A DNA stretch of 64,000 bases, taken from the IMG/VR virus record IMGVR_UViG_3300042889_001503, positions 208,438-272,437 of that record. One strand, 5' to 3'. Of this stretch, positions 538 to 61,977 are shown in pieces (the first letter of the stretch is position 1; every line of letters starts with the position of its first letter). The translations under genes and the position numbers were made by a program. The notes beneath the pieces were generated by a model. That model made no database searches, was not told where the DNA came from, and saw only the letters and a list, made by a program, of their open reading frames with translations.

Positions 538-578
538 TATAAATATCGTAACCATTATTTGTTTTTGTTATATTTATA
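538..578. promoter_or_regulatory. Back-to-back TATTTATA motifs (putative late promoters) driving divergent genes
   Basis: TATAAATA at 538-545 (TATTTATA on minus strand) and TATTTATA at 571-578, 5 nt before ATG 584. Confidence 0.55.
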
Positions 579-583
579 GAGGT

Positions 584-2176
584 ATGAAATTATTAGAAAG
601 TATAAAACAAATTATTACTGAGGCTTCAAAGAAAAAAATCTTAATGGATAAGATTGGTTTTAATGAGGATAATGCTGACCTATTAGATAAATTGTGTGGT
701 CCGTTATCGGTTTGGATGGCAAAAAAAATGATGGAGTTCCAACAATATAGTAGTGGAAGGTTGGGTAATCAAGTAAAAACGGGTTCTGAATTAATAGACC
801 AAATGAATAACAATGGTGTTTTAAGAATGAAACAGAGTGGTATCCAATCTATTATGGATTGGGTTCGGGTTGGTTTAAACGGTAATTTGGGCGAATATAA
901 AGATTTACCTTTTGTTGACTTGGTTTTACAGTCAAAAGAATGGCACGATAATTTGGAAATTGGACAGGGTGATATTAATTATAAAGAACAAAACCCAACT
1001 ATATTAGATTTCACTGATGAAAATGGAAATGGGTTTTATTGGGCTGATTTGAATACAAAAAACTCATCAGAAGAATGTAATAGAATGGGACATTGTGGAA
1101 GAAGTTCTTATGGATATCTTTATTCATTAAGACAAGTAATTCCGATTAACAACAAATATAAATTAAACAAATCAGTTCTAACTGCGGCAATTGGTGAGGA
1201 TGGTATTATGTATCAGTTGAAGGGTGTTAAGAACTCAAAACCAAAAGATGAATACCATCAATACATTCAACCGTTATTCTATGTGTTAGGTGGTGAAGGT
1301 GAAGAAGATGATTATCTAATTCAAGGTTTTGGAACGGAGTACGCATCTGAACAGGATTTTAAATTGTCTGACTTACCGGAACAAACAATCAAAGAATTGT
1401 ATCAAAATAGACCGGAGTTGTTCTCGTCAAGACCTATGCAACGATTGTTAGATAAGATGGGTATTATTGAAATGGAACCATTACCAACAGGATTCTCATT
1501 AGAAATTAAACCTGAGGATTTTGATGATTATGTTGATGGATGTACCTATCGTACTTATACTAATAGAACAACCGGAAAACAAACAAGAACAAGTATTTTT
1601 GTTGAAATAATGGCTGGTGATGCTTGGGATTTGTGGAATCAAGACGGTTACGAAGATTTTGGTAGTTATTTCCAATATACAGTAGACAAACCAACCGAAG
1701 AAAGATTGTGGGATATTGTTAGAAAAATGGCAGAAAGAGATGGTGTTGAATTAGATGAGGATTTAGATTTAGAAGATTCTATCAAACAAGTGGATGATGA
1801 TTGGGAAATAAGAAATGCTATTGGTGGTGCGATAAATGATGCTGACGCAAATGATTATGTAGATTTTCTACAGAAAGAAATTGAGTCGGCGTTAGAGTTT
1901 TATGGTAATGTATATGAATTTAATGACACCGGAGCCAAAATTCAAGTCGATTTAGCTAATTTAGTTGATATTGATGAAGGTTGGGTTGATGAAATATTTG
2001 AAAATCATATGAATAGGGATGGTAAGTATGATTTAGAAGGAATATTTAATGAATTATTATCTGAAAGTCATATTGATAAACCTGACTTTGACCCCGATGA
2101 CAGATGGTATCCATCACCTGATGATAGTGTTGTAAATGAAAATGTTAATTATAGATTAGATGATATAAGTATATGA
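584..2176 (+). CDS. Hypothetical protein, leader-bearing, acidic C-terminal half
   Basis: 530 aa ORF; MKLLESIKQIITEAS leader; ECNRMGHCG motif; D/E-rich C-terminus. Confidence 0.8.
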   Translation: MKLLESIKQIITEASKKKILMDKIGFNEDNADLLDKLCGPLSVWMAKKMMEFQQYSSGRLGNQVKTGSELIDQMNNNGVLRMKQSGIQSIMDWVRVGLNGNLGEYKDLPFVDLVLQSKEWHDNLEIGQGDINYKEQNPTILDFTDENGNGFYWADLNTKNSSEECNRMGHCGRSSYGYLYSLRQVIPINNKYKLNKSVLTAAIGEDGIMYQLKGVKNSKPKDEYHQYIQPLFYVLGGEGEEDDYLIQGFGTEYASEQDFKLSDLPEQTIKELYQNRPELFSSRPMQRLLDKMGIIEMEPLPTGFSLEIKPEDFDDYVDGCTYRTYTNRTTGKQTRTSIFVEIMAGDAWDLWNQDGYEDFGSYFQYTVDKPTEERLWDIVRKMAERDGVELDEDLDLEDSIKQVDDDWEIRNAIGGAINDADANDYVDFLQKEIESALEFYGNVYEFNDTGAKIQVDLANLVDIDEGWVDEIFENHMNRDGKYDLEGIFNELLSESHIDKPDFDPDDRWYPSPDDSVVNENVNYRLDDISI

Positions 2177-2883
2177 GTTTAAGTAAGGATTTAACAATTG
2201 TAATCCCCTGTAAAAATGAGGGATTAATCATAAAGAAAACTTTAGGATTGTTAAACTTGCAAAATAATATTAAAGGTGTAAATGTAATGGTTGCCGATTC
2301 TTCAACGGACGATGGATTCACACAGAAATGTATTCTTGGTTCATACCATACCAACATCAATGTAAAAATAGTTAAAGGGGGATTTCCGGCTGAAGCCAGA
2401 AACAATGGTGTCAAAAAGATAAAAACTCCTTATGTTTTATTTTTGGATGCCGACATATTCATCAACCAATATTGTTTATTAAATTGTATGGTTGAAGTTA
2501 TGAAAGAAAATGATTATCATTTGTCAACAACTAAAATGAGAACTGACGATGGTGATTACAATTATGTGTACAAATCATTTGATGTTATCCAATACTTAAC
2601 CAAATTCTCCACACCCTTTGCGGTTGGAGGATTTATGTTATTTAATTTAGAGGAATTCAATTCATTGGGAGGATTTAATCCGGATGACAAGTTCGCTGAG
2701 GATTATCATTTAAGTTCAAAAATAAAACCAAATAAGTTTTATGTGGCAAACAAAATTGTTTATACCACATCAAGACGATTCAAGAACAAAGGTTTATTCT
2801 ATATGGTTAAGATGATGATTAAATCTTGGTTTAATAGAAATAATGATGAGTTCTTCACAAAGGAACATAATTACTGGACATAA
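2173..2883 (+). CDS. Glycosyltransferase family 2
   Basis: IVIPCKNE, VADSSTD, ARNNG, LFLDAD, GGF...FAED GT-A motifs. Confidence 0.9.
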   Translation: MSLSKDLTIVIPCKNEGLIIKKTLGLLNLQNNIKGVNVMVADSSTDDGFTQKCILGSYHTNINVKIVKGGFPAEARNNGVKKIKTPYVLFLDADIFINQYCLLNCMVEVMKENDYHLSTTKMRTDDGDYNYVYKSFDVIQYLTKFSTPFAVGGFMLFNLEEFNSLGGFNPDDKFAEDYHLSSKIKPNKFYVANKIVYTTSRRFKNKGLFYMVKMMIKSWFNRNNDEFFTKEHNYWT

Positions 2884-3821: not shown

Positions 3822-3836
3822 ATTTATATTTGTGCT

Positions 3837-5369: not shown

Positions 5370-5480
5370 ATGATTGTGTAACTTTTTTGATGTCTGTTAC
5401 GTATAATAACTGACAATAAAGTTGATGAGATAATAAATAAAAAAAACTTTAAAAAAGTTTGGTAGTATTAAAAAAAGTGT

Positions 5481-5488
5481 TATCTTTG
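5481..5488 (+). promoter_or_regulatory. Bacteroidota-type sigmaA promoter -7 box
   Basis: TATCTTTG with upstream TTTG/TTGG near -33. Confidence 0.7.
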
Positions 5489-5494
5489 TCAAAC

Positions 5495-5673
5495 AAATAA
5501 GGAATAAAAGATTATGTCGAAAAAGAGGGGCGGAAACCCAAATACGTCGAAAGATGGTGACAAGGAATGTTAGGCAATCCTAAAACCTAACTGCTAAGAA
5601 TCAAGTGTTATGATTCGGGTTAACAACCTCAACTTATGGTGAAACAAAAAAAGGTTCCTTCGGGAACCTTTTT
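5495..5673 (+). ncRNA. Putative structured non-coding RNA of unknown family
   Basis: Own promoter and terminator; hairpins GGG-CGGAAA-CCC, CGTC-GAAA-GATG (5545-5556), GTTAGG/CCTAAC, GAATCA/TGATTC, GGTT/AACC; only a 19-aa ORF. Confidence 0.5.
5646..5673. terminator. Bidirectional intrinsic terminator with UUCG tetraloop
   Basis: AAAAAAAGGTTCC-TTCG-GGAACCTTTTT between convergent units. Confidence 0.85.
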
Positions 5674-6157
5674 AATTGGGCATATTTCTTGTAAACACAT
5701 CACCATATCTATCAACAATAATTGTTGGGGATTCGTTAACTCTAAATTTAAGATGGTTAGGGTGTTGAATTGATGTATTTATAATTATTTTAATCCTATT
5801 ATGTGTTCCATTTAACCACATATGATAATCAATACCCGCTACATTGTCGATAACATTAATTGAACATCTAACAACACATTCTTGCATTATTCTTCTTGCT
5901 GATTGTATTATTGTTGATTCTATATCCATTATAGAATCGTTAATTTCATCTGGGTCAACTCTTTGAAATGAACTACTAGAACCGACAGACTCCTGAGAAT
6001 GGGGGTTTTTATACAAGTTAATTAAACTATTTTCACTTCTATGTAATCTTCTAATAAAATCTTGTTCACCTAAGATATTATTTACAACAATTTCATATAT
6101 TAAAATTGGTTTTGGTTCTGTATATTCCCTTAATATCTGTCTAATTAATTCCTTCAT
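5672..6157 (-). CDS. Hypothetical protein, leader-bearing
   Basis: Probable start MKELIRQILREY just after TATTTAT on minus strand (6162-6168); track start 6196. Confidence 0.7.
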   Translation of the reverse strand: MKELIRQILREYTEPKPILIYEIVVNNILGEQDFIRRLHRSENSLINLYKNPHSQESVGSSSSFQRVDPDEINDSIMDIESTIIQSARRIMQECVVRCSINVIDNVAGIDYHMWLNGTHNRIKIIINTSIQHPNHLKFRVNESPTIIVDRYGDVFTRNMPN

Positions 6158-6261
6158 AGTAATAAATATATATTTTTTCAATAAATGCTTGTGCAATTAA
6201 AGTAAATGTGTTACTTTTGTCCTATCAAACTGAAACAATAACCTTAACACATACAGAAACT

Positions 6262-6375
6262 ATGAAAACAATTACCTTCACAATGCAAGAGATATGGGCG
6301 GCTTCTCGTCCATCTGTTCAAAAAAGTAAAAAAGCTTACAACAGAAAACCAAAACACAATAAAGATAAGTACTAA
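6262..6375 (+). CDS. Small basic protein, ArfA-like C-terminus
   Basis: Manual ORF of 37 aa MKTITFTMQEIWAASRPSVQKSKKAYNRKPKHNKDKY; own TACTTTTG promoter (6212-6219) and terminator. Confidence 0.6.
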   Translation: MKTITFTMQEIWAASRPSVQKSKKAYNRKPKHNKDKY

Positions 6376-6379
6376 TATC

Positions 6380-6404
6380 AAACCCATCTCCGGATGGGTT
6401 TTTT
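6380..6404 (+). terminator. Intrinsic terminator
   Basis: AAACCCATC-TCCG-GATGGGTTT plus T-run. Confidence 0.8.
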
Positions 6405-6527
6405 ATTTAACGAGAGTAAAAAGTTAAAATAATTACCTTCGTTTTATTTTGGGGAGTAAAAAATTGATAAAATTACCCTCGTAATATAAACGAGAGTAAT
6501 TTTTACCTTCTTGTTATATTTATAGAT

Positions 6528-6896
6528 ATGGATGTTAAAATTAGTGAGGGGAAGTTAGAGTTTTTAATGGATACTATCTTTGATGGTTTGGGTGTAGATG
6601 TCAATCGTCTATCACACAATTTCCAAGTAAGAATGAGTTATTTAGAATTTTTAGCTTCTGTAACAACAAGACGAGAAATGGTTGCTAAATATGATTTTGA
6701 GTGGAATTACATAATTGTGTTTGATGATAAGTTTTATGATTTGGTTAAACCTTGGGTTTCTCGGAAAGTTTATGATGTAATTAAAGAAGATTTAATTAAG
6801 AGAATTTTTAAGGTGTATACCAAGAAATATAAATCAATATATAAAGAGGAGCCTAAATCAATTAAATTTGTTGATAAGGATTTTAATAAAGTTTAA
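6528..6896 (+). CDS. Hypothetical protein, leader-like start
   Basis: MDVKISEGKL; TATTTATA at 6517-6524. Confidence 0.7.
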   Translation: MDVKISEGKLEFLMDTIFDGLGVDVNRLSHNFQVRMSYLEFLASVTTRREMVAKYDFEWNYIIVFDDKFYDLVKPWVSRKVYDVIKEDLIKRIFKVYTKKYKSIYKEEPKSIKFVDKDFNKV

Positions 6897-6934: not shown

Positions 6935-6951
6935 ATGCCTACTTTTGTCGA

Positions 6952-9438: not shown

Positions 9439-9460
9439 AATTTATATGATATTTATTGTT

Positions 9461-9984: not shown

Positions 9985-9985
9985 T

Positions 9986-12367: not shown

Positions 12368-12415
12368 ATTTCAAAGATACAACATATTTTTTGTTCTCAC
12401 AAGATATTTATCACT

Positions 12416-13230: not shown

Positions 13231-13508
13231 TACACTTTGAAGATAAATTCTTTAGACATATTCTTTTTACACTCAGTTCCGATTGGGAACATACCTTGAC
13301 TATTAGAAACATCTTCACAGTCAACAGCAAGCCAATCAGTAGTCATATGAACCATAAACTTTACTTGTTCCGGTTTCATAGGTTTGTTACAACAAACACA
13401 TCTCTCGGTGTGTCCATCCTTTTGTAATCTTTCGTTTTTATCGAAGTTAGGGCTGATGTATAGTTCGGTAGTGTTCATAATAATATCATTTAGATTACAA
13501 AGATACAA
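13230..13508 (-). CDS. Hypothetical Cys-containing protein
   Basis: RCVCCNKPM...FPIGTEC; real start probably the downstream MNTTEL, since TATCTTTG lies at 13498-13505 on minus strand. Confidence 0.65.
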   Translation of the reverse strand: MYLCNLNDIIMNTTELYISPNFDKNERLQKDGHTERCVCCNKPMKPEQVKFMVHMTTDWLAVDCEDVSNSQGMFPIGTECKKNMSKEFIFKV

Positions 13509-13520: not shown

Positions 13521-13549
13521 TTGACAAAATAACTTTCAATGATTATTAT
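13521..13549 (+). promoter_or_regulatory. Housekeeping-sigma-like promoter
   Basis: TTGACA-N17-TATTAT upstream of the Pth2 gene. Confidence 0.55.
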
Positions 13550-14120: not shown

Positions 14121-14133
14121 TATATTTATAGTT

Positions 14134-18095: not shown

Positions 18096-18165
18096 ATCAA
18101 ATAAATATCTAACAAAGATAAAACATTTTATTGATTATCCGGGGGGAATTATATATAATTAGAGT

Positions 18166-20186: not shown

Positions 20187-20637
20187 TAGTTCTCTTCCAC
20201 CACTTCAGGAACTTGTTATCCGGAGAAAGGTGGGGGATGATAAGTTTGTCTATCAATATCATTATGATGGATAGAGAACCCATTACCATTAGGAAGATTA
20301 AAAATGTCAACATAGTTTATATTATTAAGAGTTACCGGTGATAATCACCGTCAATTAGTAAAGATACAAATAAATTATGACATTCTCAACAAAAGGGGGG
20401 ATTGTTTAATAATAATATTAAATAAAAAAAATAAACCCTTAGTGTGATTATGAGATTCGTAATAAAATGGGGGATTTATATAAAAAATATAAAGCAGGTT
20501 GGAGTCTACTCTTCCACCACTCGGTCCGCCCCCTGTCGGGTTGATTACCGATTCAGTGATACAAATATACGACTAATAATTTACACCACCAAACAAAACC
20601 GGGGATTATTTAATATTATTTCAATATATTTATCTGT

Positions 20638-21500: not shown

Positions 21501-21532
21501 ATGGAATGTATTATCTTTGTAAAAAATAAGAT

Positions 21533-22578: not shown

Positions 22579-22635
22579 ATTTGACATTGGGGATATAATT
22601 GATTATTCTTTAATTCCATAAGGTATATAACAATT

Positions 22636-23096: not shown

Positions 23097-23165
23097 CTTT
23101 TTTTGAAAAAATATTTGTTAATATAAACTTTTTATATTATCTTTGTGGTATTAAAATAAACTACT

Positions 23166-25249: not shown

Positions 25250-25292
25250 TTTTATTTTGGAGTTGGGGGATATTTATTATAAAAGATATATT

Positions 25293-25927: not shown

Positions 25928-25961
25928 CACCCCTTTTAAAGTTAAGGGATATTTATTTGAT

Positions 25962-26963: not shown

Positions 26964-26991
26964 CCGATATATTTATATTAAAACAAATTAT

Positions 26992-28523: not shown

Positions 28524-28537
28524 ATTATCTTTGTCAA

Positions 28538-29347: not shown

Positions 29348-29367
29348 ATTGGGGGATATTTATTTAT

Positions 29368-35080: not shown

Positions 35081-35136
35081 ACAACAAAGATACTAAAACT
35101 ATTTCTTATTATCTAATAATAATTTATATTTTTACA

Positions 35137-36190: not shown

Positions 36191-36203
36191 GATATTTATT
36201 GAT

Positions 36204-37085: not shown

Positions 37086-37107
37086 ATTTACACAGATATT
37101 TATAGTT

Positions 37108-48216: not shown

Positions 48217-48248
48217 TATAAATACTAACATATTTTAATATATTTATA
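48217..48248. promoter_or_regulatory. Back-to-back TATTTATA motifs (putative late promoters)
   Basis: TATAAATA at 48217-48224 and TATTTATA at 48241-48248, 3 nt before ATG 48252. Confidence 0.55.
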
Positions 48249-50674: not shown

Positions 50675-50724
50675 TTAACCATTTGATTTATATTAAATCA
50701 TTATTTATAATTAAAGAAAAAACT

Positions 50725-50973: not shown

Positions 50974-51067
50974 GTTATAACTGAGAAAAATAGAAAAAGG
51001 AGTTAGTTTTTTACTAATTCCTTTTTTTATTTGGAAAAATGTCTTATCTTTGTAAAAAATATTAAAA

Positions 51068-51703: not shown

Positions 51704-51704
51704 T

Positions 51705-52343: not shown

Positions 52344-52377
52344 TATTTTTTATTATCTTTGTAAAAAAATAGAAATA

Positions 52378-53070: not shown

Positions 53071-53072
53071 TA

Positions 53073-53287: not shown

Positions 53288-53362
53288 ATCCCAATAATAA
53301 ATAAGTAAATTAAAAAGTAAAACATATTGATTTTTTATCTGAGTATAGTATATTTATTACCA

Positions 53363-53444
53363 ATGACGAGATACAAACTATACACGCCGAACAATTATAT
53401 TACTTAACAAGTAAGTCCCTATTTTATTTTAGGGACTTTTTTTT
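53363..53444 (+). promoter_or_regulatory. Leader peptide plus terminator (putative Asn-sensing attenuator)
   Basis: ORF MTRYKLYTPNNYIT (53363-53407); terminator AAGTCCCTA/TAGGGACTT plus T-run (53413-53444); competing ACTTA/TAAGT pairing. Confidence 0.55.
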
Positions 53445-53480
53445 GCCCATACGTAAACAATTAAAATTAAATATAAAACT

Positions 53481-54308
53481 ATGAAACAAACAAAAACTTA
53501 CCACGAATTGGTACAAAAAATGAGAACGTTCTTTGTAAACAAGAACTTTATTGAGGTTCCATCTCAATCACGATTATCTATTTTAGCTGCTTGCGAAAAT
53601 CCACATTCAGTTAAAACATTTGAATATGGAGGTGAAATTTGGCCGTTACCACAGACAGGACAAATGTGGTTGGAATATGAATTATTGAAAAATCCTGAAT
53701 GGGACGGTGTATTCTGTATATCAACATCATACAGAGAAGAGAAAAATCCAATCCCGGGTCGTCACGAATTAATCTTCCCAATGTTTGAATTTGAATCAAA
53801 AGGAACGATGGAAGATTTGGTTGCATTAGAACTTGAATTGTTACAATTCTTAGGATTTGATTCACCGGTTGAGGTAAACTATGAAGATGTGTGTAAAGAA
53901 TACGGTGGTGTATCCATTTTAGAGGACGAACACGAATCAAGAATGTGGAAAGAAAAAAGTGAGGTTATTTCATTACAAAACTTCCCAATTAGAACAAACC
54001 CATTTTGGAATATGAAACATAATTCAGATAACATCTTCAATAAGGTTGACGTAATCCTTTTTGGGCAAGAAACAATTGGTTCAGCTGAGAGAAGTTGTGA
54101 TGTTGTTAAGATGAGAGAGATGTTCTATACCATAGAAAATGGTGGTTACTCTCAGAAACTATTTGAATTATTTGGGAAAGATAGAGTTGAGAAAGAATTG
54201 GAAGAATTCTTATCTTTGGACTTCTTCCCACGTTTTGGTGCGGGGATTGGTCTAACAAGATTGGCGAGAGCTTACAATATAAATAAAGAATTAGTTGAGA
54301 CATATTAA
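53481..54308 (+). CDS. Class II aaRS catalytic-domain-only protein (AsnRS paralogue, asparagine synthetase AS-AR type)
   Basis: LPQTGQMWLE, STSYREE...RH...FPMFEFE (motif 2), ETIGSAERS, GAGIGLTRL (motif 3); no anticodon-binding domain. Confidence 0.8.
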   Translation: MKQTKTYHELVQKMRTFFVNKNFIEVPSQSRLSILAACENPHSVKTFEYGGEIWPLPQTGQMWLEYELLKNPEWDGVFCISTSYREEKNPIPGRHELIFPMFEFESKGTMEDLVALELELLQFLGFDSPVEVNYEDVCKEYGGVSILEDEHESRMWKEKSEVISLQNFPIRTNPFWNMKHNSDNIFNKVDVILFGQETIGSAERSCDVVKMREMFYTIENGGYSQKLFELFGKDRVEKELEEFLSLDFFPRFGAGIGLTRLARAYNINKELVETY

Positions 54309-54328
54309 AATGAATAGTATTTATTACT

Positions 54329-54526
54329 ATGAAGAAATTTTTAACATTTTTAATAATATGGATTGGTAGTAATTTGGCAGTACCTTTTTGGGTTGTTGGT
54401 CACGTTCATTTAAGTTTGAATATCTATAAAGATATTTATGAAATCTTGGCTTCTTGTGGTATGAACATATTAGTTTTGTTGGCTTTTTGGTTTGAATGGA
54501 AAAAAGAGAAAAAAAAAGAAAATTAA
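54329..54526 (+). CDS. Small membrane protein
   Basis: Two hydrophobic segments; TATTTAT at 54318-54324. Confidence 0.6.
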   Translation: MKKFLTFLIIWIGSNLAVPFWVVGHVHLSLNIYKDIYEILASCGMNILVLLAFWFEWKKEKKKEN

Positions 54527-54562
54527 TTTTGAAATGTCATAAAGATTATTTAATTTTGTCCT

Positions 54563-54742
54563 ATGAGTAAAGTAGTAAAAGAAATAGGGAAAAAATGGGA
54601 ACAAGTTTATGATGATATAGACGAGACGATTATTTGGAGATACGACACTTCAAAAAGCACATTTGGACCGTATGAGGTCGAAATAAAATATAAACGACCG
54701 GTGGTTAAAACCAAGAAGGTAATAAGGAAAGTCACAATATAG
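54563..54742 (+). CDS. Small hypothetical protein
   Basis: Manual ORF of 59 aa after TAATTTTG (54551-54558); terminator 54728-54753. Confidence 0.55.
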   Translation: MSKVVKEIGKKWEQVYDDIDETIIWRYDTSKSTFGPYEVEIKYKRPVVKTKKVIRKVTI

Positions 54743-54776
54743 TGACTTTTTTTGGTTTATAAAATATTTATGAATT

Positions 54777-55120
54777 ATGGAACAAACAAGAATGTCAGAA
54801 ATTAATCAACTATTTGAGGAAATTAAAAGTCAAACTAAATTGAAAGAAGTTAAACCTTTATTAGTTGAATTGGAAGAAATAATTACCAAAAAAGAGGAAT
54901 CAAATCAAAATAAAGTTATCCAACTACAACAGGAAATCAATCGACTTAGTCATCTGTAACATCCGGTGATAATTCTACACCAAAAACTAATAACTCCACA
55001 ACACCAAATTATAATAACTCCACAAGGAATCAGGTTGGGTATACCCATAATTCACAACTTCAGGGGTATAATAATCAAATTTCACCAATTATACCTAATT
55101 TTCACGGTTTACCAATATAA
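54777..55120 (+). pseudogene. Coiled-coil protein with apparently frameshifted Asn/Ser/Thr-rich tail
   Basis: ORF 54777-54959 stops; an adjacent frame is open from 54950 to TAA at 55118-55120. Confidence 0.35.
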
Positions 55121-55201
55121 CACAAAAAAAAATAAAAGAAATAGTTAATACAATTATTTGTTGATATTTATTAGTAACCAAATCTATAAAACACAACAAT
55201 T

Positions 55202-56323
55202 ATGAAAAACCTATCAAAAGAAGAATTATTAAGCCGTCTTGAGGCAATTAACAGAAGTAATGCTATTATTTATTTCGATTTATCGGGAATTATATTAGGT
55301 GTTAATGACATTTTTTTGGTGGCAATGGGGTATGGAATCGGTAATCACGATGAACTTATTGGTAAACACCATAGTACTTTTGTATGTGAAGAATATGCAA
55401 AGTCACCTGAATATGAAAAATTTTGGGACATATTAAGAAGTGGTAAGTACTACCAGGGAGAATTTGAAAGGAGAAGAAAAGATAGAAGTCTTATAAATCT
55501 TCAAGCGACTTATAATCCTATTTTTGATGATAGTGGTAAGATTACTAAAATAATGAAAATCGCTACTGACATTACGTCAATTGTTGATAGCAAGAAACAA
55601 ATAGACGCAATTAACCGAAGTACTGCTCTTATTAATTTTAATACAGATGGATTTATATTAGATGTAAATTCTATATTTTTAGAAACTATGGGGTATAAAC
55701 CCAACGAAAAAAATAATTTAATAGGGAAACATCACAGTGTTTTTGTAAGTTACGAGTATTCAAAGTCCGATGAGTATATTAAGTTTTGGGAAAATCTAAG
55801 AAAGGGTAAGTTTTTTGATGGAATATTTGAAAGAAGAAAAGTAGATGGTTCTATTGTTTATTTACAGGCATCTTATAATCCTGTGGTTGACAGTAAAGGA
55901 AATATTACTGAAGTAGTTAAAATTGCGACAGATATTACTGAGTCAGTAAATAATAAGAAAAAAATAAATGAACTTACGACTAATTTGACAATTGAGTTGG
56001 AAAACTCTCAAAAACTTAAACACTCAATTGAATTAGAAAAAAATGCCGCTCTGAATGATTTAGATGTAGTATTGAAAAAGAGTCAAAATGAGTTAATAAA
56101 AATAATTGTTAAATGTGCATTGGCTGTTATAGTTGGTGTTGGTATTGTGACAACTATGTTATATTGGGTGGCTATTGTGACAAATCAAGATACACAAATT
56201 ATTGGTTCAACTTGGTCAAATATGTTTAGTGTATTATTAACTAACGCATTTTCAATCGTTGGTACAATTATGGGAATTAAATACGCCACGCAGGATGGTA
56301 GTAATAAACCCTCAAGTAATTAA
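55202..56323 (+). CDS. Tandem PAS/PAC sensor fused to coiled coil and two C-terminal TM helices, no output domain
   Basis: Two AINRS...IGKHHS.FV...FW..LR.GK...F.RR.......LQA.YNP..D..G.I....KIATDIT repeats; TATTTAT at 55165-55171. Confidence 0.85.
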   Translation: MKNLSKEELLSRLEAINRSNAIIYFDLSGIILGVNDIFLVAMGYGIGNHDELIGKHHSTFVCEEYAKSPEYEKFWDILRSGKYYQGEFERRRKDRSLINLQATYNPIFDDSGKITKIMKIATDITSIVDSKKQIDAINRSTALINFNTDGFILDVNSIFLETMGYKPNEKNNLIGKHHSVFVSYEYSKSDEYIKFWENLRKGKFFDGIFERRKVDGSIVYLQASYNPVVDSKGNITEVVKIATDITESVNNKKKINELTTNLTIELENSQKLKHSIELEKNAALNDLDVVLKKSQNELIKIIVKCALAVIVGVGIVTTMLYWVAIVTNQDTQIIGSTWSNMFSVLLTNAFSIVGTIMGIKYATQDGSNKPSSN

Positions 56324-56349
56324 AATTTACCACAAATAACTAAAATTGA

Positions 56350-56398
56350 ATTGTCTTTGATATTTATATTAATAAACTAATTAAATATCAAAGACAAT
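56350..56398 (+). promoter_or_regulatory. Perfect 17-bp hairpin covering the endolysin initiation region, with TATTTATA in its 5' arm
   Basis: ATTGTCTTTGATATTTA (56350-56366) / TAAATATCAAAGACAAT (56382-56398); ATG at 56399. Confidence 0.8.
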
Positions 56399-57223
56399 AT
56401 GTTATTAAAAGTAGGGTCGAAAGGTGACGACGTAAAAAAACTACAAACAAAATTAGGGACAACCTCTGATGGTAATTTTGGTCCCGGTACCGAGAAATTG
56501 GTTAAAGAATGGCAAACCAAAAACGGATTAACTGCTGACGGAATAGTTGGTGAAGGAACTTGGAAAAAAATGTTTCCGGGTGAGATAATCAAAGAAGATG
56601 TTGTGATTCCAACAGGTGGTCCATTTAAATTAGAAAAATTAAAAGGACATATCCCTGAATCAGTAATTGCTCAGATTCCGGACACAGCAAAAAAATTCAA
56701 CATTACTAATCCATTAAGATTAGCTCACTTCTTAGCTCAATGTGGTCACGAATCAGGTGGATTCAAATCAGTGTCGGAAAACTTAAATTATTCAGCAAAA
56801 GGTTTAAAAGACACATTTAAAAAATATTTTATAAGTGAAGCTGCGGCAACACCTTACGCAAAAAACCCTGAAAAAATCGCATCAAAAGTATATGGTGGAA
56901 GAATGGGTAATGGTGATGAATCTACAAAGGAAGGTTATAAATTCAGAGGTAGAGGATATATCCAATTAACTGGTAAAGACAACTATAAAAATTTCACTAA
57001 ATTCATCGGAGAAGATTGTATTGGAAATCCTGATTTAGTTGCAACAAAATATCCGTTAGCGTCTGCGGCATTCTTCTTTGACTCAAATAAATTATGGTCT
57101 ATTTGTGATAAAGGCTCGGATGATGCTACGGTAACGTCGGTTACTAAAAGAGTAAATGGTGGAACCATTGGTTTACCTGACAGAATTAAACACTTTAAAG
57201 AATATTATAACTTATTAAAATAA
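56399..57223 (+). CDS. Endolysin: peptidoglycan-binding domain plus GH19 catalytic domain
   Basis: LKVGSKGDDV..LQ..L...DG.FG..T; RLAHFLAQCGHESG; RGRGYIQLTG; VTKRVNGG..GL.DR. Confidence 0.92.
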   Translation: MLLKVGSKGDDVKKLQTKLGTTSDGNFGPGTEKLVKEWQTKNGLTADGIVGEGTWKKMFPGEIIKEDVVIPTGGPFKLEKLKGHIPESVIAQIPDTAKKFNITNPLRLAHFLAQCGHESGGFKSVSENLNYSAKGLKDTFKKYFISEAAATPYAKNPEKIASKVYGGRMGNGDESTKEGYKFRGRGYIQLTGKDNYKNFTKFIGEDCIGNPDLVATKYPLASAAFFFDSNKLWSICDKGSDDATVTSVTKRVNGGTIGLPDRIKHFKEYYNLLK

Positions 57224-57266
57224 TTTTATATATTTACGGTATATTTATAATAAAAAACAATTAAAA

Positions 57267-58145
57267 ATGAATAAGAAATTAATTAAAGAAGACATTGCAA
57301 ATATGAAATACCTTTTTGGTTATAAACCGGGAAGAGTTATTTCTGAACAAGATATTGATTACACTACTGACGATTATTTAGATACTAACGACACTGAATT
57401 AGAAGAAAGTAACCCATTCAAAATTGGTGGGGGATTTGAAGATTACAATTTCCCTGATAAATTAAAAGATAGATTAAGTGACATTTATGATTTATTAGAT
57501 GAAGTAATGGAAGACCCGGATAACGACCCATCTGATTATTCAGATATGTATGATTTTGCGGGTGTAATAATTAGTCAAGTCTTAAATAAATTACGTGATG
57601 AATTTGGTGAGGATTTTGAAGAATACGAAGATGATGTTGATGATTATCTTAGAAATAATGAAGATGAAACAATATTTGATTTTTATAATAGTCGTTCAGG
57701 TTTTGACGATGAAGATGATGAAGATGAATTTGATGAGGATATGAATGAACAATATGACAACCAAAATGGTATGAATTGGGTTCAAAATACTACAATGGAT
57801 AGACAAAGTCCAATAGATGATGACAATGATGTTGAAGGGGGTGTGATATCAATCCTTAAAAAACATCGTTTACTTGATAACGTAGTAGAACCGGATGATG
57901 CAAGAATATTACTTAGAAATCAATCATCTGAAGTTGTTCAAAAGATTTTATCACTTTTACCTTCATTTACTGAATTAGGGTTTTTAGCGTTTATAAATTG
58001 TGAATCAGCAGATTTTTCTGATGTGGACATTTGTAGTTTACCTAACTTAGCTTTTATAAACTTAAATGGTACTGAAAATAATTTTGAAGAACAAGATTAT
58101 GAATGTGCTAACACAGAAGATTCACCTTTTTATTTCCTTGAATAG
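57267..58145 (+). CDS. Very acidic leader-bearing protein
   Basis: MNKKLIKEDIANMK...ISEQ; D/E-rich tracts; LRR-like C-terminal fragment; TATTTATA at 57242-57249. Confidence 0.75.
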   Translation: MNKKLIKEDIANMKYLFGYKPGRVISEQDIDYTTDDYLDTNDTELEESNPFKIGGGFEDYNFPDKLKDRLSDIYDLLDEVMEDPDNDPSDYSDMYDFAGVIISQVLNKLRDEFGEDFEEYEDDVDDYLRNNEDETIFDFYNSRSGFDDEDDEDEFDEDMNEQYDNQNGMNWVQNTTMDRQSPIDDDNDVEGGVISILKKHRLLDNVVEPDDARILLRNQSSEVVQKILSLLPSFTELGFLAFINCESADFSDVDICSLPNLAFINLNGTENNFEEQDYECANTEDSPFYFLE

Positions 58146-58158
58146 ATATTAAAAAAAT

Positions 58159-58184
58159 AAAACCCCCAATTTAGGGGGTTTTTT
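58159..58184. terminator. Terminator between convergent genes
   Basis: AAAACCCCC/GGGGGTTTT. Confidence 0.75.
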
Positions 58185-58186
58185 AT

Positions 58187-58879
58187 TTAAGATAAGTCTT
58201 TGGACATATTGATTGCAGCTTGTAAAGCCATTCCCATATCCTCAATTACTAATTTACCACGTTTCTTATATGGTATAACATAAGATATACCGGATTCTCT
58301 CATCCATTTTTTATCTAACTTGTCAGATTTACCATATAATTCAAGATACTTATATTCCCAACCAGCCCATTCCCACTCTTCGTAGTCTTCTTCTTTTGGT
58401 TTATAGTCGGCATCAAATAATCTATCCCCAATTTTAAATGTTTGACCTCCTCTGTGTGTATATCCGTGGTAACCAATTAGTTTATTATTATCGTCATATA
58501 CTTCAGCAACTCCGTGAGGATATTCCTCACAAACTTTCATTTTGTTTTGGTAATACCACCAACCACGTTCAATATCACCAACATATTCATCATCTTTGGT
58601 TAAAAATGAATTTGGTAAATGTTGTTCTCTTTTTAATTCTGGGGTATCTCCAAAATAATGAGAACCAATTTTTCCTCCGGTATATTTTTGTATAAAATAA
58701 ATACATTCCGGATTTATTAACCACCCATTTAAATCTCGGTGTGGAGTAATTCGGGACACTAGTTTTGTGAAACCTAAATTAATGTGAATTTTGTTTAATT
58801 TAGATTTTCCGGTATATTCAGGGTATTTTTCAAACTTTAATTTGATTTTCCCAATGTAGGGAGTTGTATTTTTTATCAT
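58187..58879 (-). CDS. Hypothetical protein
   Basis: Probable start MIKNTT; track start 58954. Confidence 0.7.
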   Translation of the reverse strand: MIKNTTPYIGKIKLKFEKYPEYTGKSKLNKIHINLGFTKLVSRITPHRDLNGWLINPECIYFIQKYTGGKIGSHYFGDTPELKREQHLPNSFLTKDDEYVGDIERGWWYYQNKMKVCEEYPHGVAEVYDDNNKLIGYHGYTHRGGQTFKIGDRLFDADYKPKEEDYEEWEWAGWEYKYLELYGKSDKLDKKWMRESGISYVIPYKKRGKLVIEDMGMALQAAINMSKDLS

Positions 58880-58927
58880 AATATAAAATTTTATGTAATG
58901 ATATGAAATTTCAAAGTATTTATCAAT

Positions 58928-59167
58928 ATGAAAATTAGAATAACTGAATCGCAAATAAAAAAAATCGAAGAAGGTATCTTTTGGGATGAGGAGAACTTAA
59001 ATGCGTTAAAAGGTATTACGGGAACCAAACAACAAAAAGAAGTCTTTAATGTTGAGGTAATAGAACCATTTTCAATAACATTGACGGATTCAATTCAATA
59101 TCATAGATTAGTTTATATATTAAGAACAAATGGTGTTAAATTTAAAGCTAAGGTTGATAAAATATGA
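58928..59167 (+). CDS. Leader-bearing hypothetical protein
   Basis: MKIRITESQIKKIEE; TATTTAT at 58917-58923. Confidence 0.7.
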   Translation: MKIRITESQIKKIEEGIFWDEENLNALKGITGTKQQKEVFNVEVIEPFSITLTDSIQYHRLVYILRTNGVKFKAKVDKI

Positions 59168-59622
59168 AACTAATAATTACAGAAAGTCAGTATAGAAAAA
59201 TAATCAAAGAAGATACTCAATTAGAATACACTAGTGAATTTTTGGATGGTGTTACGGTTGTTGTGGTATTTGAGGATGACCCATTATACGAACAAGTTAA
59301 AGGATACTTTGAGGAGTATGGGTTTGGGTTTATGGTTCCCGGTAAGAATTTAATCATTATTGATGGTGAAATATTAGTGGGACAACCGGACGCTAAAAGT
59401 GTTTTAAAATTTATTGAAGCTCACGAGGTTACCCACGTATTATTAAGTCACGATGGTCCAAGAGATGAGAAAGATGAGTTGGAGGCTGACTTGGGAGCTT
59501 ACCTATTATTACAAGATAAAGGATATTACGAATCAATCCGAACATTACTAGACCACTTCCAAGAAAGACACGGAGTTGAGTTTGATGAGAGTATGTTGGA
59601 CGATATAAAAAATAGAATGTAA
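59164..59622 (+). CDS. Leader-bearing HExxH metallopeptidase-like protein
   Basis: MKLIITESQYRKIIKED; IEAHEVTH...ELEAD. Confidence 0.65.
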   Translation: MKLIITESQYRKIIKEDTQLEYTSEFLDGVTVVVVFEDDPLYEQVKGYFEEYGFGFMVPGKNLIIIDGEILVGQPDAKSVLKFIEAHEVTHVLLSHDGPRDEKDELEADLGAYLLLQDKGYYESIRTLLDHFQERHGVEFDESMLDDIKNRM

Positions 59623-59634
59623 AAAAAAACAATT

Positions 59635-59889
59635 ATGACAGAAATAAATTACCCTTCAGAAAAAACGTATTTCATTGGATATAATGAAAACGATGATAAT
59701 GTTCATTATGGAATAATAGATGTTGACCAATGTATGGTGACAGGAAAAGAAACCGTTTATACAACAACAGTGGAACAGGAATATATTGACGAATTATTAG
59801 TTCATAATATAATATATGAAGATACTTTACCAAAATCGTTGGATTTACCTGAAGGTTTATCTGGATTGACTCACACTTTAACAATTTAA
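59635..59889 (+). CDS. Hypothetical protein
   Basis: 84 aa ORF. Confidence 0.6.
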   Translation: MTEINYPSEKTYFIGYNENDDNVHYGIIDVDQCMVTGKETVYTTTVEQEYIDELLVHNIIYEDTLPKSLDLPEGLSGLTHTLTI

Positions 59890-59898
59890 ACACAATAC

Positions 59899-60005
59899 CT
59901 GACAAAATAACAAACTAACCTGACATCTTGTCAGGTTTTTTGTTTTGGCACGATTTTGATAAAATGAGATTTGTGCTTGACACATTATAAATTAATATAT
60001 ATACT
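59899..60005 (+). promoter_or_regulatory. dnaK upstream region: TGACA-N3-TGTCA palindrome and TTGACA-N17-TATACT promoter
   Basis: AACCTGACATCTTGTCAGGTT inverted repeat; TTGACA at 59977-59982; TATACT at 60000-60005. Confidence 0.6.
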
Positions 60006-60025
60006 TTAACAAAACTTATTAAACT

Positions 60026-61894
60026 ATGGGAAAAATTATTGGAATTGACTTAGGAACAACTAACTCGTGTGTCTCTGTAATGGAGGGTAACGAACCGGTT
60101 GTAATAGCAAATTCAGAAGGTAAAAGAACAACACCTTCAATCATCGGTTTCATCAACGAAGGAGAAAGAAAAGTTGGTGACCCGGCAAAAAGACAGGCGG
60201 TAACCAACCCGACTAAAACAATATCATCAATTAAACGATTTATGGGTTCTACCTATGACGAGAGTAAAAACGAAATTGGGAAAGTTCCTTACTCTGTTGT
60301 AAACGAAGGTTCTCAACCAAGAGTTCAGATTGACGATAGAAAATACTCACCACAAGAATTGTCGGCAATCATCTTACAAAAGATGAAACAAACTGCCGAA
60401 GATTATTTAGGTGAATCAGTAACTGATGCGGTAATCACCGTCCCAGCTTACTTTAACGATGCCCAACGTCAGGCTACAAAAGAGGCGGGTGAAATTGCCG
60501 GATTAAATGTTCGTCGTATTATCAACGAACCAACCGCGGCGGCTCTTGCGTATGGACTTGACAAAAAAGGTGATAGTAAAATTGTTGTGTTTGACTGTGG
60601 AGGGGGAACTCACGACGTGTCTATTCTTGACTTAGGTGGTGGTGTATTTGAGGTATTATCTACCGATGGAGACACACATTTAGGAGGGGACGACTTTGAC
60701 AGAGTCATTATTGATTTCTTGGTTGAAGAATTTAAGAACGATAATGGTGGTTTAGACATCTCAAAAGATGCTATGGCATTACAAAGGTTAAGAGAAGGTG
60801 CTGAGAAAGCGAAGGTTGAATTATCTTCATCACCTCAGACAGAAATCAACTTACCTTATTTAAGTGCTGATGCTACCGGACCAAAACACTTGGTAAAAAC
60901 ATTAACAAGAGCGAAGTTTGAACAACTTGCGGCTGAGTTAATCAAAAGAACCATTGACCCTTGTAAAACGGCATTGAAAAACGCGAAACTTAAGGTTTCC
61001 GATATTGATGAGATTATCCTTGTTGGTGGAACAACAAGAATCCCGGCAATACAAGATGCGGTTAAGAAGTTCTTTGGTAAAGAACCATCAAAAGGTGTTA
61101 ATCCGGATGAGGTAGTTGCGTTAGGTGCGGCTATTCAAGGAGGTGTATTGGCTGGTGATGTGAAAGACGTGTTGTTATTAGACGTAACACCACTTTCATT
61201 AGGTATTGAAACAATGGGTGGTATTTTAACACGACTTATTGAGGCAAATACCACAATCCCAACCAAAAAGTCACAAGTGTTCTCAACAGCTGTTGATAAT
61301 CAACCTTCTGTAGAGATTCACGTCTTACAAGGAGAGAGACCAATGGCAAAAGACAACAGAACGATGGGTAGATTCCATTTAGATGGTTTACCACCATCAA
61401 TGAGAGGTGTTCCTCAAATTGAGGTAATCTTTGATATTGACGCGAATGGTATCATCAATGTATCTGCAGTTGACAAATCAACAAACAAAACACAATCAAT
61501 TAGAATTGAGGGTTCAACGGGATTATCTCAAGAGGATATTGAAAGAATGAAGGCTGAAGCTGAAGAAAATGCTGAAGCGGACAAAAAACTTAAAGAGGAT
61601 GTGGACACATTAAACTCCGCTGACAACCTGATATTCCAAACAGGTAAATCTTTAACGGATTTAGAGGATAAGATTTCTGAAGAACAAAAAACAGAAATAA
61701 CAACTCTTCTTGATACCTTGAAAGAATCTCATTCTAATAAAGATGTGGAAAATGTTAAAACGATTATGGAAGAACTTACCCAAAAGTTTCAAACCATCAC
61801 ACAGGAATTATACAATAGTGTAAATGAGAGTGAGACTCCGGAATCAGATATTAACGCTTCTGACGTAGAGTTTGAAGAAGTTAAACCTGAGTAA
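60026..61894 (+). CDS. dnaK: Hsp70 chaperone DnaK
   Basis: [57 protein letters not shown]. Confidence 0.98.
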
Positions 61895-61915
61895 CATTTT
61901 ACGATAATGTTTTTT

Positions 61916-61946
61916 AATCCCAATAATTTTTTTATTGGGATTTTTT
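61916..61946 (+). terminator. Intrinsic terminator
   Basis: AATCCCAATAA/TTATTGGGATT plus T-run. Confidence 0.75.
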
Positions 61947-61977
61947 GTTTATCTTTGTTCCATAAATAAATAATATT

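What the first reader, a model, noticed from the sequence alone, without database searches (positions are those of the whole stretch)
538..61957. Two mutually exclusive promoter classes; TATTTAT(A) motif implies near-leaderless late mRNAs
Seen: Bacteroidota-type TAnnTTTG boxes (3825, 5481, 6212, 6940, 12372-, 13498-, 21512, 23138, 28526, 35085-, 39568-, 51045, 52354, 54551, 61950) precede genes without the leader. A different motif, (GA)TATTTAT(A), occurs more than 20 times (571, 538-, 6517, 9450, 12405, 14123, 18101-, 25950, 26970, 29357, 36193, 37097, 48217-, 48241, 55165, 56361, 57242, 58917 and others) and heads the leader-bearing and lysis genes. It often lies only 3-5 nt before ATG, and twice forms back-to-back divergent pairs. 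Known: TAnnTTTG is the Bacteroidota sigmaA -7 element; the T4 late promoter is TATAAATA, which is the exact reverse complement of this motif. Inference: a phage late sigma (gp55-like) recognises TATTTATA and makes essentially leaderless transcripts.
Basis: partly seen in the sequence, partly recalled or inferred. Interest (0 to 1): 0.65.

Follow-up and report, generated by a model that had tools for sequence, protein, structure and literature searches.

The report
Phage late promoter TATTTAT, often leaderless
A 272-kb freshwater phage of Flavobacteria-like hosts marks its non-early genes with an exact heptamer, TATTTAT, that behaves like a promoter. It is probably read by a previously unrecognised phage sigma factor, and in a third of cases it sits so close to the start codon that the mRNA should have no leader.

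Summary
Whole-window counts of TATTTAT and TAnnTTTG are not above chance. Their positions are.

- **Enrichment.** TATTTAT is the most enriched 7-mer upstream of starts in the 272-kb phage genome (68 observed, 4 expected). One-mismatch variants are barely enriched.
- **Likely start site.** An A lies 4 nt after the heptamer in 82% of gene-proximal sites.
- **Leaderless arrangement.** TATTTAT-N4-ATG occurs 22 times, and all 22 open real ORFs. Control heptamers of the same composition give 0-4.
- **Conservation.** The heptamer is invariant in 35 of 37 diverged relatives while its flanks vary. It is also the top upstream motif before portal, terminase and tail genes of the cultured T4-like Flavobacterium phage immuto.
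- **Genes served.** It heads the head, tail, baseplate, protease and endolysin genes.
- **Sigma factors.** The genome, outside the window, encodes two. One is SigA-like. The other is a divergent 249-aa protein with a weak match to the T4 gp55 family. Immuto has only the divergent one, so I assign TATTTAT to it.

- Mutual exclusivity is not shown (7 genes carry both motifs, 9.6 expected).
- The host-type class also has leaderless members.
- A small third class, TTGACA-N17-TATAnT, exists.
- The reverse-complement likeness to T4's TATAAATA has no mechanistic meaning.

No transcription start data could be obtained.

The parts
571..577 (+). TATTTAT, 6 nt before ATG of 584-2176 (530 aa); half of a divergent pair
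539..545 (-). TATTTAT, 14 nt before ATG of the minus-strand gene ending at 524; other half of the divergent pair. The 59-nt gap holds no other promoter-like motif
6162..6168 (-). TATTTAT-N4-ATG, gene 5672-6157 (-)
6517..6523 (+). TATTTAT-N4-ATG, gene 6528-6896
9450..9456 (+). TATTTAT-N4-ATG at 9461 (MKLIITESQ...); first of an array of leader-bearing paralogs running to about 11916
12405..12411 (+). TATTTAT-N4-ATG, gene 12416-12823; diverges from the host-type box at 12372-12379 (-)
14123..14129 (+). TATTTAT-N4-ATG, gene 14134-14904; directly follows a hairpin and T-run
18101..18107 (-). TATTTAT-N5-ATG, gene 17790-18095 (-); in tandem with the host-type box at 18113-18120 (-)
20627..20633 (+). 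TATTTAT-N4-ATG, gene 20638-21120
25950..25956 (+). TATTTAT-N5-ATG at 25962 (MRIIITESK...)
29357..29363 (+). TATTTAT-N4-ATG, gene 29368-30495; follows a terminator-like hairpin
36193..36199 (+). TATTTAT-N4-ATG, gene 36204-36596 (MKIIITESK...)
37097..37103 (+). TATTTAT-N4-ATG, gene 37108-38226 (MKIKITETQ...)
48241..48247 (+). TATTTAT-N4-ATG, gene 48252-48641; half of the second divergent pair
48218..48224 (-). TATTTAT, 18 nt before ATG of 47432-48199 (-); other half of the pair in a 52-nt gap
54318..54324 (+). TATTTAT-N4-ATG, gene 54329-54526
54765..54771 (+). TATTTAT-N5-ATG, gene 54777-54959
58917..58923 (+). TATTTAT-N4-ATG, gene 58928-59167 (MKIRITESQ...)
25271..25277 (+). TATTTAT tata AAAG..., short leader (15 nt gap), gene 25293-25625; follows a terminator-like hairpin
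26970..26976 (+). TATTTAT with a 15-nt gap to ATG 26992
50702..50708 (+). TATTTAT aatt AAAG..., 16-nt gap, gene 50725-50973
53297..53303 (-). TATTTAT with a 9-nt gap, gene 53102-53287 (-)
55165..55171 (+). TATTTAT with a 30-nt gap, gene 55202-56323 (protein with two PAS domains)
56361..56367 (+). TATTTAT with a 31-nt gap, gene 56399-57223 (endolysin: PG_binding_1 + Glyco_hydro_19)
57242..57248 (+). TATTTAT aata AAAA..., 18-nt gap, gene 57267-58145
3825..3832 (+). host-type box TATATTTG-N4-ATG (3837); overlaps a TATTTAT at 3821
6940..6947 (+). host-type box TACTTTTG-N4-ATG (6952)
12372..12379 (-). host-type box TATCTTTG-N4-ATG, gene 12089-12367 (-)
13498..13505 (-). host-type TTTG...TATCTTTG, gene 13230-13478 (-)
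21512..21519 (+). host-type TTTG...TATCTTTG, gene 21533-21781
23138..23145 (+). host-type TTTG...TATCTTTG, gene 23166-24242
28526..28533 (+). host-type TATCTTTG-N4-ATG (28538). The TATTTAT at 28500 lies in the loop of the preceding terminator hairpin and is probably not a promoter
35085..35092 (-). host-type TATCTTTG-N4-ATG, gene 33647-35080 (-)
51045..51052 (+). host-type TATCTTTG, gene 51068-51703
52354..52361 (+). host-type TATCTTTG, gene 52378-53070
54551..54558 (+). host-type TTTG...TAATTTTG-N4-ATG (54563)
61950..61957 (+). host-type TATCTTTG, gene 61978-62388
59977..60005 (+). third class: TTGACA-N17-TATACT, 20 nt before the Hsp70/DnaK gene 60026-61894
22581..22609 (+). third class: TTGACA-N17-TATTCT before gene 22636-23043; follows a terminator
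13521..13549 (+). third class: TTGACA-N17-TATTAT, 6 nt before ATG 13556

Best explanation
(a)TATTTAT is the core, -10-like element of the phage's own middle/late promoters. It occupies -12 to -5, the register of the host sigma-A box TAnnTTTG. Transcription starts at the conserved A four bases downstream.

Where that A is the A of ATG (22 genes), or lies 1-2 nt before it (about 8 more), the mRNA is leaderless or nearly so. Elsewhere it carries a short A-rich leader of about 10-27 nt (TATTTAT-wwww-AAAA...).

The phage has no RNA polymerase of its own. Host core polymerase is redirected by a phage sigma factor. The likeliest reader is the divergent 249-aa sigma at G000:43791-44540 (-), outside the window. 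Host-type TTTG...TATCTTTG promoters serve early genes.

**Shown:** motif, geometry, conservation, gene association, and presence of the sigma genes.
**Inferred:** start site, timing, and which sigma reads the motif.
For: **It is a promoter-like signal**
- Enrichment and strictness.
- A flank signature found only at gene-proximal copies: A at -1 (62-82% against 25% at other copies), no G or C at position -15, T then A at the predicted -1/+1, then AAA.
- In divergent gaps of 31-59 nt the only recognisable signals are back-to-back TATTTAT.

**Geometry**
- In F. psychrophilum the sigma-A box lies at -12 to -5, so N4 puts +1 on the A (PMC9723704).

**Selection**
- Upstream of gene 43385-43765 (-) the heptamer is identical in 35 of 37 distinct relatives. 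The spacer (4-6 nt) and the upstream flank (0-16 nt) vary freely.
- The motif stays a top upstream 7-mer, at the same distances, in relatives whose sigma proteins are 68-78% identical.

**Timing**
- It heads the prohead protease (28453), the major-head operon (29562), the tail sheath (92503), baseplate hub and wedge, the head-tail adaptor and the endolysin.

**Reader**
- Only one genome hit to phrog_234, the T4 gp55 family.
- In the AlphaFold model, residues 30-131 superpose on sigma-E region 2 (91 residues, rmsd 2.3 A, Z 8.8). Every top match is a sigma factor.
- The nearest ESM Atlas clusters are all viral 'RNA polymerase sigma factor'.
- The cultured Flavobacterium phage immuto has TATTTAT as its top upstream 7-mer before portal, terminase and tail genes.
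- Immuto has a full-length homolog of this sigma (27% identity, hhalign 97%), placed behind one of its early promoters.
- Immuto has no SigA-like sigma.
Against: - There are no start-site data. The only RNA runs holding related sequence are short, low-depth metatranscriptome contigs of 90-97% identical strains. They show no ends.
- The sigma assignment rests on co-occurrence in two lineages. A third homolog-bearing phage (LR756508, 25% identity) shows no TATTTAT enrichment in the 40 kb examined. That could be co-variation or a counter-example.
- In this phage the 249-aa sigma gene has no recognisable early promoter. It lies in a block of 22 same-strand genes (43385-61160) whose only visible intergenic signals are a TATTTAT (61182-) and a TTGATA-N17-TATATT (58458-).
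- TATTTAT also precedes a DnaB-like helicase and many small genes scattered among early-type promoters. 'Late' is secure only for the structural module.
- The match to the gp55 family is weak (E 3e-5, one third of the profile). hhalign against T4 gp55 gives 5.7% probability.
Confidence: 0.6

Rival explanations
1. TATTTAT is a promoter, but it is read by the phage's SigA/RpoD-like sigma (G000:163675-164475, 266 aa), not by the divergent sigma.
For: - This sigma is unambiguous: regions 1.2, 2 and 4, and E 4e-47 to solved SigA.
- Its operon sits behind a canonical host-type promoter at 163065. It is therefore plausibly made early, as a factor for later promoters should be.
Against: - Immuto has the TATTTAT motif but no SigA-like sigma.
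- Its region 4.2 reads LTKERVRQIKEKALRKLR. This nearly matches my recollection of the E. coli sigma-70 helix that reads TTGACA. That fits the separate TTGACA-N17-TATAnT class better than a motif with no -35 element.
Confidence: 0.17
2. Host sigma-A holoenzyme itself reads TATTTAT as a weak variant of its -7 box, perhaps after phage modification of the polymerase or with a phage activator. No phage sigma would be needed.
For: - The register is the same as the host box (-12 to -5).
- Shifted by one base, the heptamer shares TA..T.T with TAnnTTTG.
- T4 middle transcription is a precedent for appropriating the host sigma (general knowledge).
Against: - The final G of the host box, which defines its consensus, is absent and position 6 is A.
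- None of the six motif classes found at mapped F. psychrophilum start sites resembles TATTTAT.
- The heptamer is far stricter than host boxes.
- Both phages that have the motif carry a dedicated divergent sigma.
Confidence: 0.13
3. TATTTAT is not a promoter. It is an RNA-level signal, such as an endonuclease processing site or a translation enhancer placed before start codons in a host without Shine-Dalgarno pairing.
For: - It lies close to start codons.
- The hosts use A/U-rich, non-SD initiation regions (PMC6847099; abstract only, listed).
Against: - The distance to ATG is not fixed (11, 21-25 and 38). The A four bases after the heptamer is what stays conserved.
- Back-to-back copies are the only signals in short divergent gaps, where promoters must lie.
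- About a tenth of the sites directly follow terminators.
- Intragenic copies lack the flank signature.
Confidence: 0.06

Closest known systems
T4 late promoters (TATAAATA) read by gp55 with gp33 and the gp45 clamp
   Same: - A T4-type virion module: gp23-like head protein, gp21-type protease, sheath, baseplate.
- A single, very strict, A/T-only -10-like element with no -35 element.
- It heads the structural and lysis genes.
- A phage sigma whose best family match is gp55.
   Different: - A different sequence (TATTTAT), one base closer to the start.
- The sigma carries a second, sigma-4-like domain.
- No gp33 or gp45 homolog was detected.
- About a third of the promoters abut the start codon. 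I do not recall such abutting being a feature of T4 late promoters.
Bacteroidota sigma-A promoters (TTTG at -33, TAnnTTTG at -7)
   Same: - Same register of the downstream box (-12 to -5) and the same 4-nt gap to +1.
- The phage's own early class (TATCTTTG) is of this type.
   Different: - TATTTAT lacks the terminal G and the -33 TTTG.
- It tolerates no mismatch.
- It is tied to phage structural genes.
Bacillus phage SPO1 sigma cascade (gp28, gp33/34)
   Same: - Host core polymerase is re-aimed by successive phage sigma factors.
- Here there are two phage sigmas and three motif classes.
   Different: - The order of the cascade is not established here.
- The motifs are unrelated.
- The third class is small (about 10-15 sites).
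Leaderless genes of Actinobacteria, Deinococcus and archaea (a -10 or TATA box at fixed distance from ATG)
   Same: A promoter element at a fixed short distance from the start codon, so the transcript begins at AUG.
   Different: Here it is a phage-specific promoter in a host phylum where only about 5.5% of mRNAs are leaderless.

Membership tests
T4-type late transcription (gp55 / gp33 / gp45 / TATAAATA) | Sigma belongs to the gp55 sequence family | tested here: inconclusive
   phrog_234 matches only this gene in the genome, but weakly (E 3.4e-5, profile positions 63-128 of 181). hhalign against T4 gp55 gives E 0.007 and probability 5.7%.
T4-type late transcription (gp55 / gp33 / gp45 / TATAAATA) | Sigma has a region-2-like domain only; gp33 takes the role of region 4 | tested here: not met
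   The model has a second helical domain (residues 159-248). Full-length alignments to sigma-B, sigma-E and sigma-H span both sigma-2 and sigma-4.
T4-type late transcription (gp55 / gp33 / gp45 / TATAAATA) | gp33 co-activator and gp45 sliding clamp present | tested here: inconclusive
   No match to T4 gp33, PF02916 or PF09116. These proteins diverge fast and the record is 91% complete, so absence is not shown.
T4-type late transcription (gp55 / gp33 / gp45 / TATAAATA) | Promoter is one strict -10-like element with no -35 element | tested here: met
   Only the heptamer, A at -1 and a weak W at -15/-16 carry information. Mismatch variants are not enriched.
T4-type late transcription (gp55 / gp33 / gp45 / TATAAATA) | Promoter sequence is TATAAATA | tested here: not met
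   The invariant core is TATTTAT. TATAAATA arises only when the next bases happen to be AAATA, a minority of sites.
Sigma-70 family (for the 249-aa protein) | Sigma-2 fold with the region 2.2-2.3 signature | tested here: met
   - 91 residues superpose on sigma-E region 2 at rmsd 2.3 A, Z 8.8.
- All 50 top Foldseek rows are sigma factors or models of sigma factors bound to polymerase.
- PF04542 gives a weak match, E 0.008.
- The stretch KFKPSKEKKAYSYFGT aligns with gp55's region 2.
Bacteroidota sigma-A promoter (for the TAnnTTTG class) | TAnnTTTG at -12..-5 with TTTG about 17-23 nt upstream | tested here: met
   Among 40 gene-proximal boxes, 20 are TATCTTTG. Upstream TTTG is present in 33% against 9% of other boxes. 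An A at the predicted +1 is present in 60% against 31%. Start sites were not mapped.
Leaderless mRNA | The primary 5' end coincides with the A of the start codon | not testable with these tools
   Only short assembled metatranscriptome contigs of related strains were on hand.

The most novel reading that the evidence does not exclude
The window is a hyperplastic cargo region built from a reusable cassette. Each cassette has three parts:
- a strict late promoter fused directly to the start codon (TATTTAT-N4-ATG);
- a leaderless mRNA;
- a 7-9-residue N-terminal tag, M(K/R)(I/V/L)(I/L)I(T/K)E, that ends in a gp21-type I-x-E cleavage site.

The tag would send at least 22 otherwise unrelated small proteins into the capsid for injection. 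A dedicated, previously unannotated sigma factor, shared with cultured Flavobacterium phages, would drive the set.
Probability: 0.3. Interest if true: 0.75.

Novelty: new variant of a known kind. Interest (0 to 1): 0.58.

Why it matters
- **Annotation.** It gives a simple, testable rule for the transcription programme of an abundant, uncultured group of freshwater jumbo phages of Bacteroidota. In immuto the sigma homolog is annotated as a hypothetical protein. The one lineage paper I found that probably covers these phages does not analyse promoters.
- **An experimental handle.** The same motif and sigma occur in a cultured phage-host pair (immuto and Flavobacterium sp. LMO8). Start-site mapping and in vitro transcription are therefore feasible.
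- **Leaderless expression.** The heavy use of promoter-to-ATG fusions in a phylum without Shine-Dalgarno initiation offers a natural system for studying leaderless translation.
- **Practical uses.** The motif improves start-codon calling, as several ORFs here clearly start at the ATG 4 nt after the heptamer. It also offers compact promoter parts for Bacteroidota.

Tried and rejected
- **De novo motif finding.** Two versions of my own EM motif finder gave nothing useful. One timed out and the others converged on ATG or A-runs. I used k-mer and fixed-spacing tests instead.
- **Close relatives in GenBank.** A megablast of 10 kb against GenBank phages found nothing.
- **RNA evidence.** Three metatranscriptome runs were laid on window 32500-38499. 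They yielded only short contigs of 90-97% identical strains, with no ends and no strand.
- **Terminator-promoter cassettes.** As a general rule this fails. Only 9 of 89 sites follow a strict hairpin and T-run.
- **Solved structures by sequence.** Searches with the 249-aa protein gave only chance-level MarR hits.
- **A gp33 counterpart.** The gene next to the sigma (43385-43765) shows no similarity to the immuto neighbour (E 0.37). No gp33 or gp45 match was found.
- **Leader-bearing paralogs.** A PHROG scan of ten small window proteins, six of them leader-bearing, gave no function.
- **Third class, whole-genome count.** TTGACA-N16-18-TAnnnT is not above shuffles overall (16 against about 20). 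Only its intergenic placement is notable: all 7 sites with an exact TTGACA lie in upstream gaps.
- **tRNAs.** None in the window.

Full report
**Context**

The window is the last 64 kb of a 272,437-bp IMG/VR virus record. It is 32% G+C, and CheckV estimates it 91% complete. The same DNA is held by many lake-water metagenomes.

The virion module is T4-like:
- a gp23-type major head protein;
- a gp21-type prohead protease;
- a tail sheath, a baseplate hub and wedges, and a head-tail adaptor.

I found no hint of a phage RNA polymerase among the large proteins I scanned, though I ran no RNA polymerase family search. The phage resembles the 'moraphages' described from freshwater metagenomes. Those are up to 307 kb, have predicted Flavobacteriia hosts, carry DnaK and a sigma factor, and lack an RNA polymerase (PMC12619734). 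I did not test membership. That paper does not analyse promoters.

**The observation**

Total counts are at chance level: 64 against 54 for TATTTAT, and 102 against 99 for TAnnTTTG. The signal lies entirely in placement.

I used a crude set of 338 genes for the whole genome. With it:
- TATTTAT is the most enriched 7-mer in -30..+3 of starts, 68 observed against 4.05 expected.
- It is 14-fold denser between genes than within them.
- It occurs 83 times in sense orientation within 45 nt of starts. Its same-composition permutations occur 7-34 times.
- Single-mismatch variants are scarcely enriched. The element is an exact heptamer.

The distance to ATG is sharply bimodal, at 11 and at 21-25, with a few at 38. 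TATTTAT-N4-ATG occurs 22 times, and every one opens an ORF of 40 or more codons. The twenty control heptamers give 0-4.

The window holds 16 sites with 4-6 nt to ATG and about 9 with a short leader.

**Anatomy**

Gene-proximal copies share features that the 153 other copies lack:
- A at -1;
- no G or C at position -15;
- T then A at positions +10 and +11 from the heptamer's first base;
- AAA after that A in the leadered sites.

The conserved A, four bases after the heptamer, is present in 68 of 83 sites whether or not it belongs to an ATG. This is what a transcription start looks like, with a pyrimidine at -1 and a purine at +1.

In Flavobacterium psychrophilum, where starts were mapped, the sigma-A box TAnnTTTG lies at -12 to -5. 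Only 5.5% of mRNAs there are leaderless (PMC9723704). (a)TATTTAT with a 4-nt gap has exactly that register. The 22 N4-ATG genes should therefore give leaderless mRNAs, the N5 and N6 genes near-leaderless ones, and the rest leaders of about 10-27 nt.

**Is it a promoter?**

- Short divergent gaps must contain two promoters. In the gaps at window 524-584 and 48199-48252, and at genome 200793-200836 and 202196-202228, the only recognisable signals are back-to-back TATTTAT.
- Upstream of gene 43385-43765 (-), 35 of 37 distinct relatives keep the heptamer. The spacer sequence, the spacer length (4-6 nt) and the upstream flank (0-16 nt) all vary.
- In relatives whose sigma proteins are only 68-78% identical, the motif remains a top upstream 7-mer at the same distances.
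- An RNA-level signal is unlikely, because what is conserved is the distance to the A, not the distance to the ATG.

**Which genes**

TATTTAT heads the prohead protease, the operon with the major head protein, the sheath, baseplate genes and an adaptor. In the window it heads an endolysin and a PAS-domain protein.

It also precedes a DnaB-like helicase and many small genes. 'Non-early', meaning middle or late, is the safe label.

Host-type promoters cluster in blocks of small genes (154.9-164 kb and 177-207 kb) and are scattered through the window. Their sequence is mostly TATCTTTG, with an upstream TTTG in a third of cases and an A at the predicted +1.

**The reader of the motif**

The genome encodes two sigma factors, both outside the window.

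*The SigA-like sigma.* G000:163675-164475 encodes a compact SigA/RpoD-like protein with regions 1.2, 2 and 4, and E 4e-47 to solved SigA. It lies in an operon behind a canonical host-type promoter.

*The divergent sigma.* G000:43791-44540 (-) encodes a 249-aa protein.
- Its only family match is weak and is to phrog_234, the family of T4 gp55.
- In its AlphaFold model, residues 30-131 superpose on sigma-E region 2 (rmsd 2.3 A, 91 residues, Z 8.8).
- Every top structural match is a sigma factor, over both sigma-2 and sigma-4.
- ESM Atlas neighbours are viral 'RNA polymerase sigma factor' clusters.

*The deciding comparison.* The cultured T4-like Flavobacterium phage vB_FspM_immuto_3-5A (MW353176) settles the assignment as far as computation can.
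- Its top upstream 7-mer is again TATTTAT, often as cTATTTATAAATAAA. It lies before portal, terminase, tail-fibre, tail-spike and structural genes.
- It has a full-length homolog of the 249-aa sigma, annotated as a hypothetical protein (27% identity, hhalign 97%).
- That homolog lies behind one of about 25 near-identical early promoters.
- It has no SigA-like sigma.

I therefore assign TATTTAT to the divergent sigma, with moderate confidence.

**A third class**

The SigA-like protein keeps a region 4.2 helix (LTKERVRQIKEKALRKLR). From memory, this is close to the E. coli sigma-70 helix that reads TTGACA.

Seven intergenic sites carry TTGACA-N17-TATAnT, and several more do so with one mismatch. 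They lie before the DnaK gene (window 59977), the DNA polymerase gene (82382) and others. Genome-wide the pattern is not above shuffles. Only its placement is notable, so this class is tentative.

- Exclusivity is not demonstrated: 7 genes carry both motifs against 9.6 expected (p = 0.43). At least one of them, at window 18113-/18101-, is a plain tandem arrangement.
- Host-type boxes also occur as N4-ATG fusions, 7 genome-wide.
- The reverse-complement identity with T4's TATAAATA is true of the letters. It is irrelevant to a strand-specific element whose orientation is fixed by the downstream A and ATG.
- The gp55 idea is right in spirit: a phage sigma, a lone strict -10-like box, and late genes. 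But two defining features of the T4 system were tested and not met (a sigma-2-only protein, and the TATAAATA sequence). For two more, gp33 and gp45, nothing was detected.

**What is missing**

No start-site data exist. The metatranscriptome contigs laid on window 32500-38499 come from related strains, are short and carry no ends.

In this phage the promoter of the 249-aa sigma gene itself is unresolved.

A third phage with a distant homolog (LR756508) shows a different upstream motif in the 40 kb examined. This may be co-variation and deserves a systematic test.

**A side result that bears on timing**

Twenty-two proteins share an N-terminus, M(K/R)(I/V/L)(I/L)I(T/K)E(S/N)..., and then diverge completely.

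In T4, the first 10 residues of internal proteins form a capsid targeting sequence. The prohead protease gp21 removes it by cutting after a Glu in a short motif. Diverse T4-like phages attach such tags to unrelated cargo (PMC9026906).

This phage has a gp21-type protease, and the tag ends in I-x-E. If the tag is a capsid targeting sequence, these genes must be expressed during head assembly. That fits their TATTTAT promoters: 8 of the 20 leader genes in the crude gene set have one directly upstream, none has a host-type box, and the other 12 have no promoter-like motif within 60 nt.

Noticed in passing
window 9461-11916, 17440-18095 (-), 25622-26662, 30497-30817, 31631-32002, 36204-36596, 37108-38226, 58928-59622; also G000 90376-91226, 180408, 198224, 202228: At least 22 proteins begin M(K/R)(I/V/L)(I/L)I(T/K)E(S/N/D)(Q/K) and are unrelated after about residue 12. 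The tag ends in an I-x-E motif, like the cleavage site of the T4 prohead protease, and the phage has a gp21-type protease (G000:28476-29201). It is a candidate capsid targeting sequence for injected cargo proteins.
   Followed up: partly
G000:163675-164475 (+), outside the window: A compact (266 aa) SigA/RpoD-like sigma factor. Its region 4.2 is close to the TTGACA-reading type (from memory). It sits in an operon behind a host-type promoter at 163065.
   Followed up: partly
window 59977-60005, 22581-22609, 13521-13549, 27965-27993, 19843-19871, 58898-58926 (-); G000 27921, 82382, 113617, 58458 (-): A small set of intergenic TTGACA-N17-TATAnT sites, of the kind I know from Proteobacteria and Firmicutes and unlike the Bacteroidota sigma-A promoters described in PMC9723704. 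They precede the DnaK and DNA polymerase genes, among others. They may be targets of the SigA-like phage sigma.
   Followed up: partly
window 60026-61894: A full-length Hsp70/DnaK gene (Pfam E 1e-254), as reported for 'moraphages'.
   Followed up: partly
window 55202-56323: A phage protein with two PAS domains behind a TATTTAT site; I do not recall seeing one in a phage before.
   Followed up: no
window 36976-37020: An orphan gaTATTTATa site followed at once by a hairpin (AAAACTAG...CTAGTTTT) and no ORF. It could be a very short transcript, or the motif may merely sit beside a terminator.
   Followed up: no
window 5455-5575 and 6212-6400: Host-type promoters (TATCTTTG at 5481, TACTTTTG at 6212) are followed only by tiny ORFs of 19 and 37 codons. 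The second ends at a clear terminator. These may encode micro-proteins or small RNAs.
   Followed up: no
L188 (MW353176) 60900-76200: Phage immuto has about 25 near-identical early promoter cassettes, aGTTGc-N19-TAtaTTTAGGTATCAATAATTAAAAC. Each sits before a small gene, and the box ends in AG rather than G.
   Followed up: partly
window 14134-17055: A second paralog array whose members all begin MNL(H/N/R)E(D/N)I(Q/H/K)RI(R/H)QMM or similar. The same ...IRRILRE-like N-terminal motif recurs at 5672-6157 (-).
   Followed up: no
L184 (LR756508) 80339-120962: This huge uncultured phage has a distant homolog (25% identity) of the 249-aa sigma. It shows no TATTTAT enrichment. Its top upstream words are TTAAGTT and TTTAAGT, which may be a different cognate promoter.
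   Followed up: no
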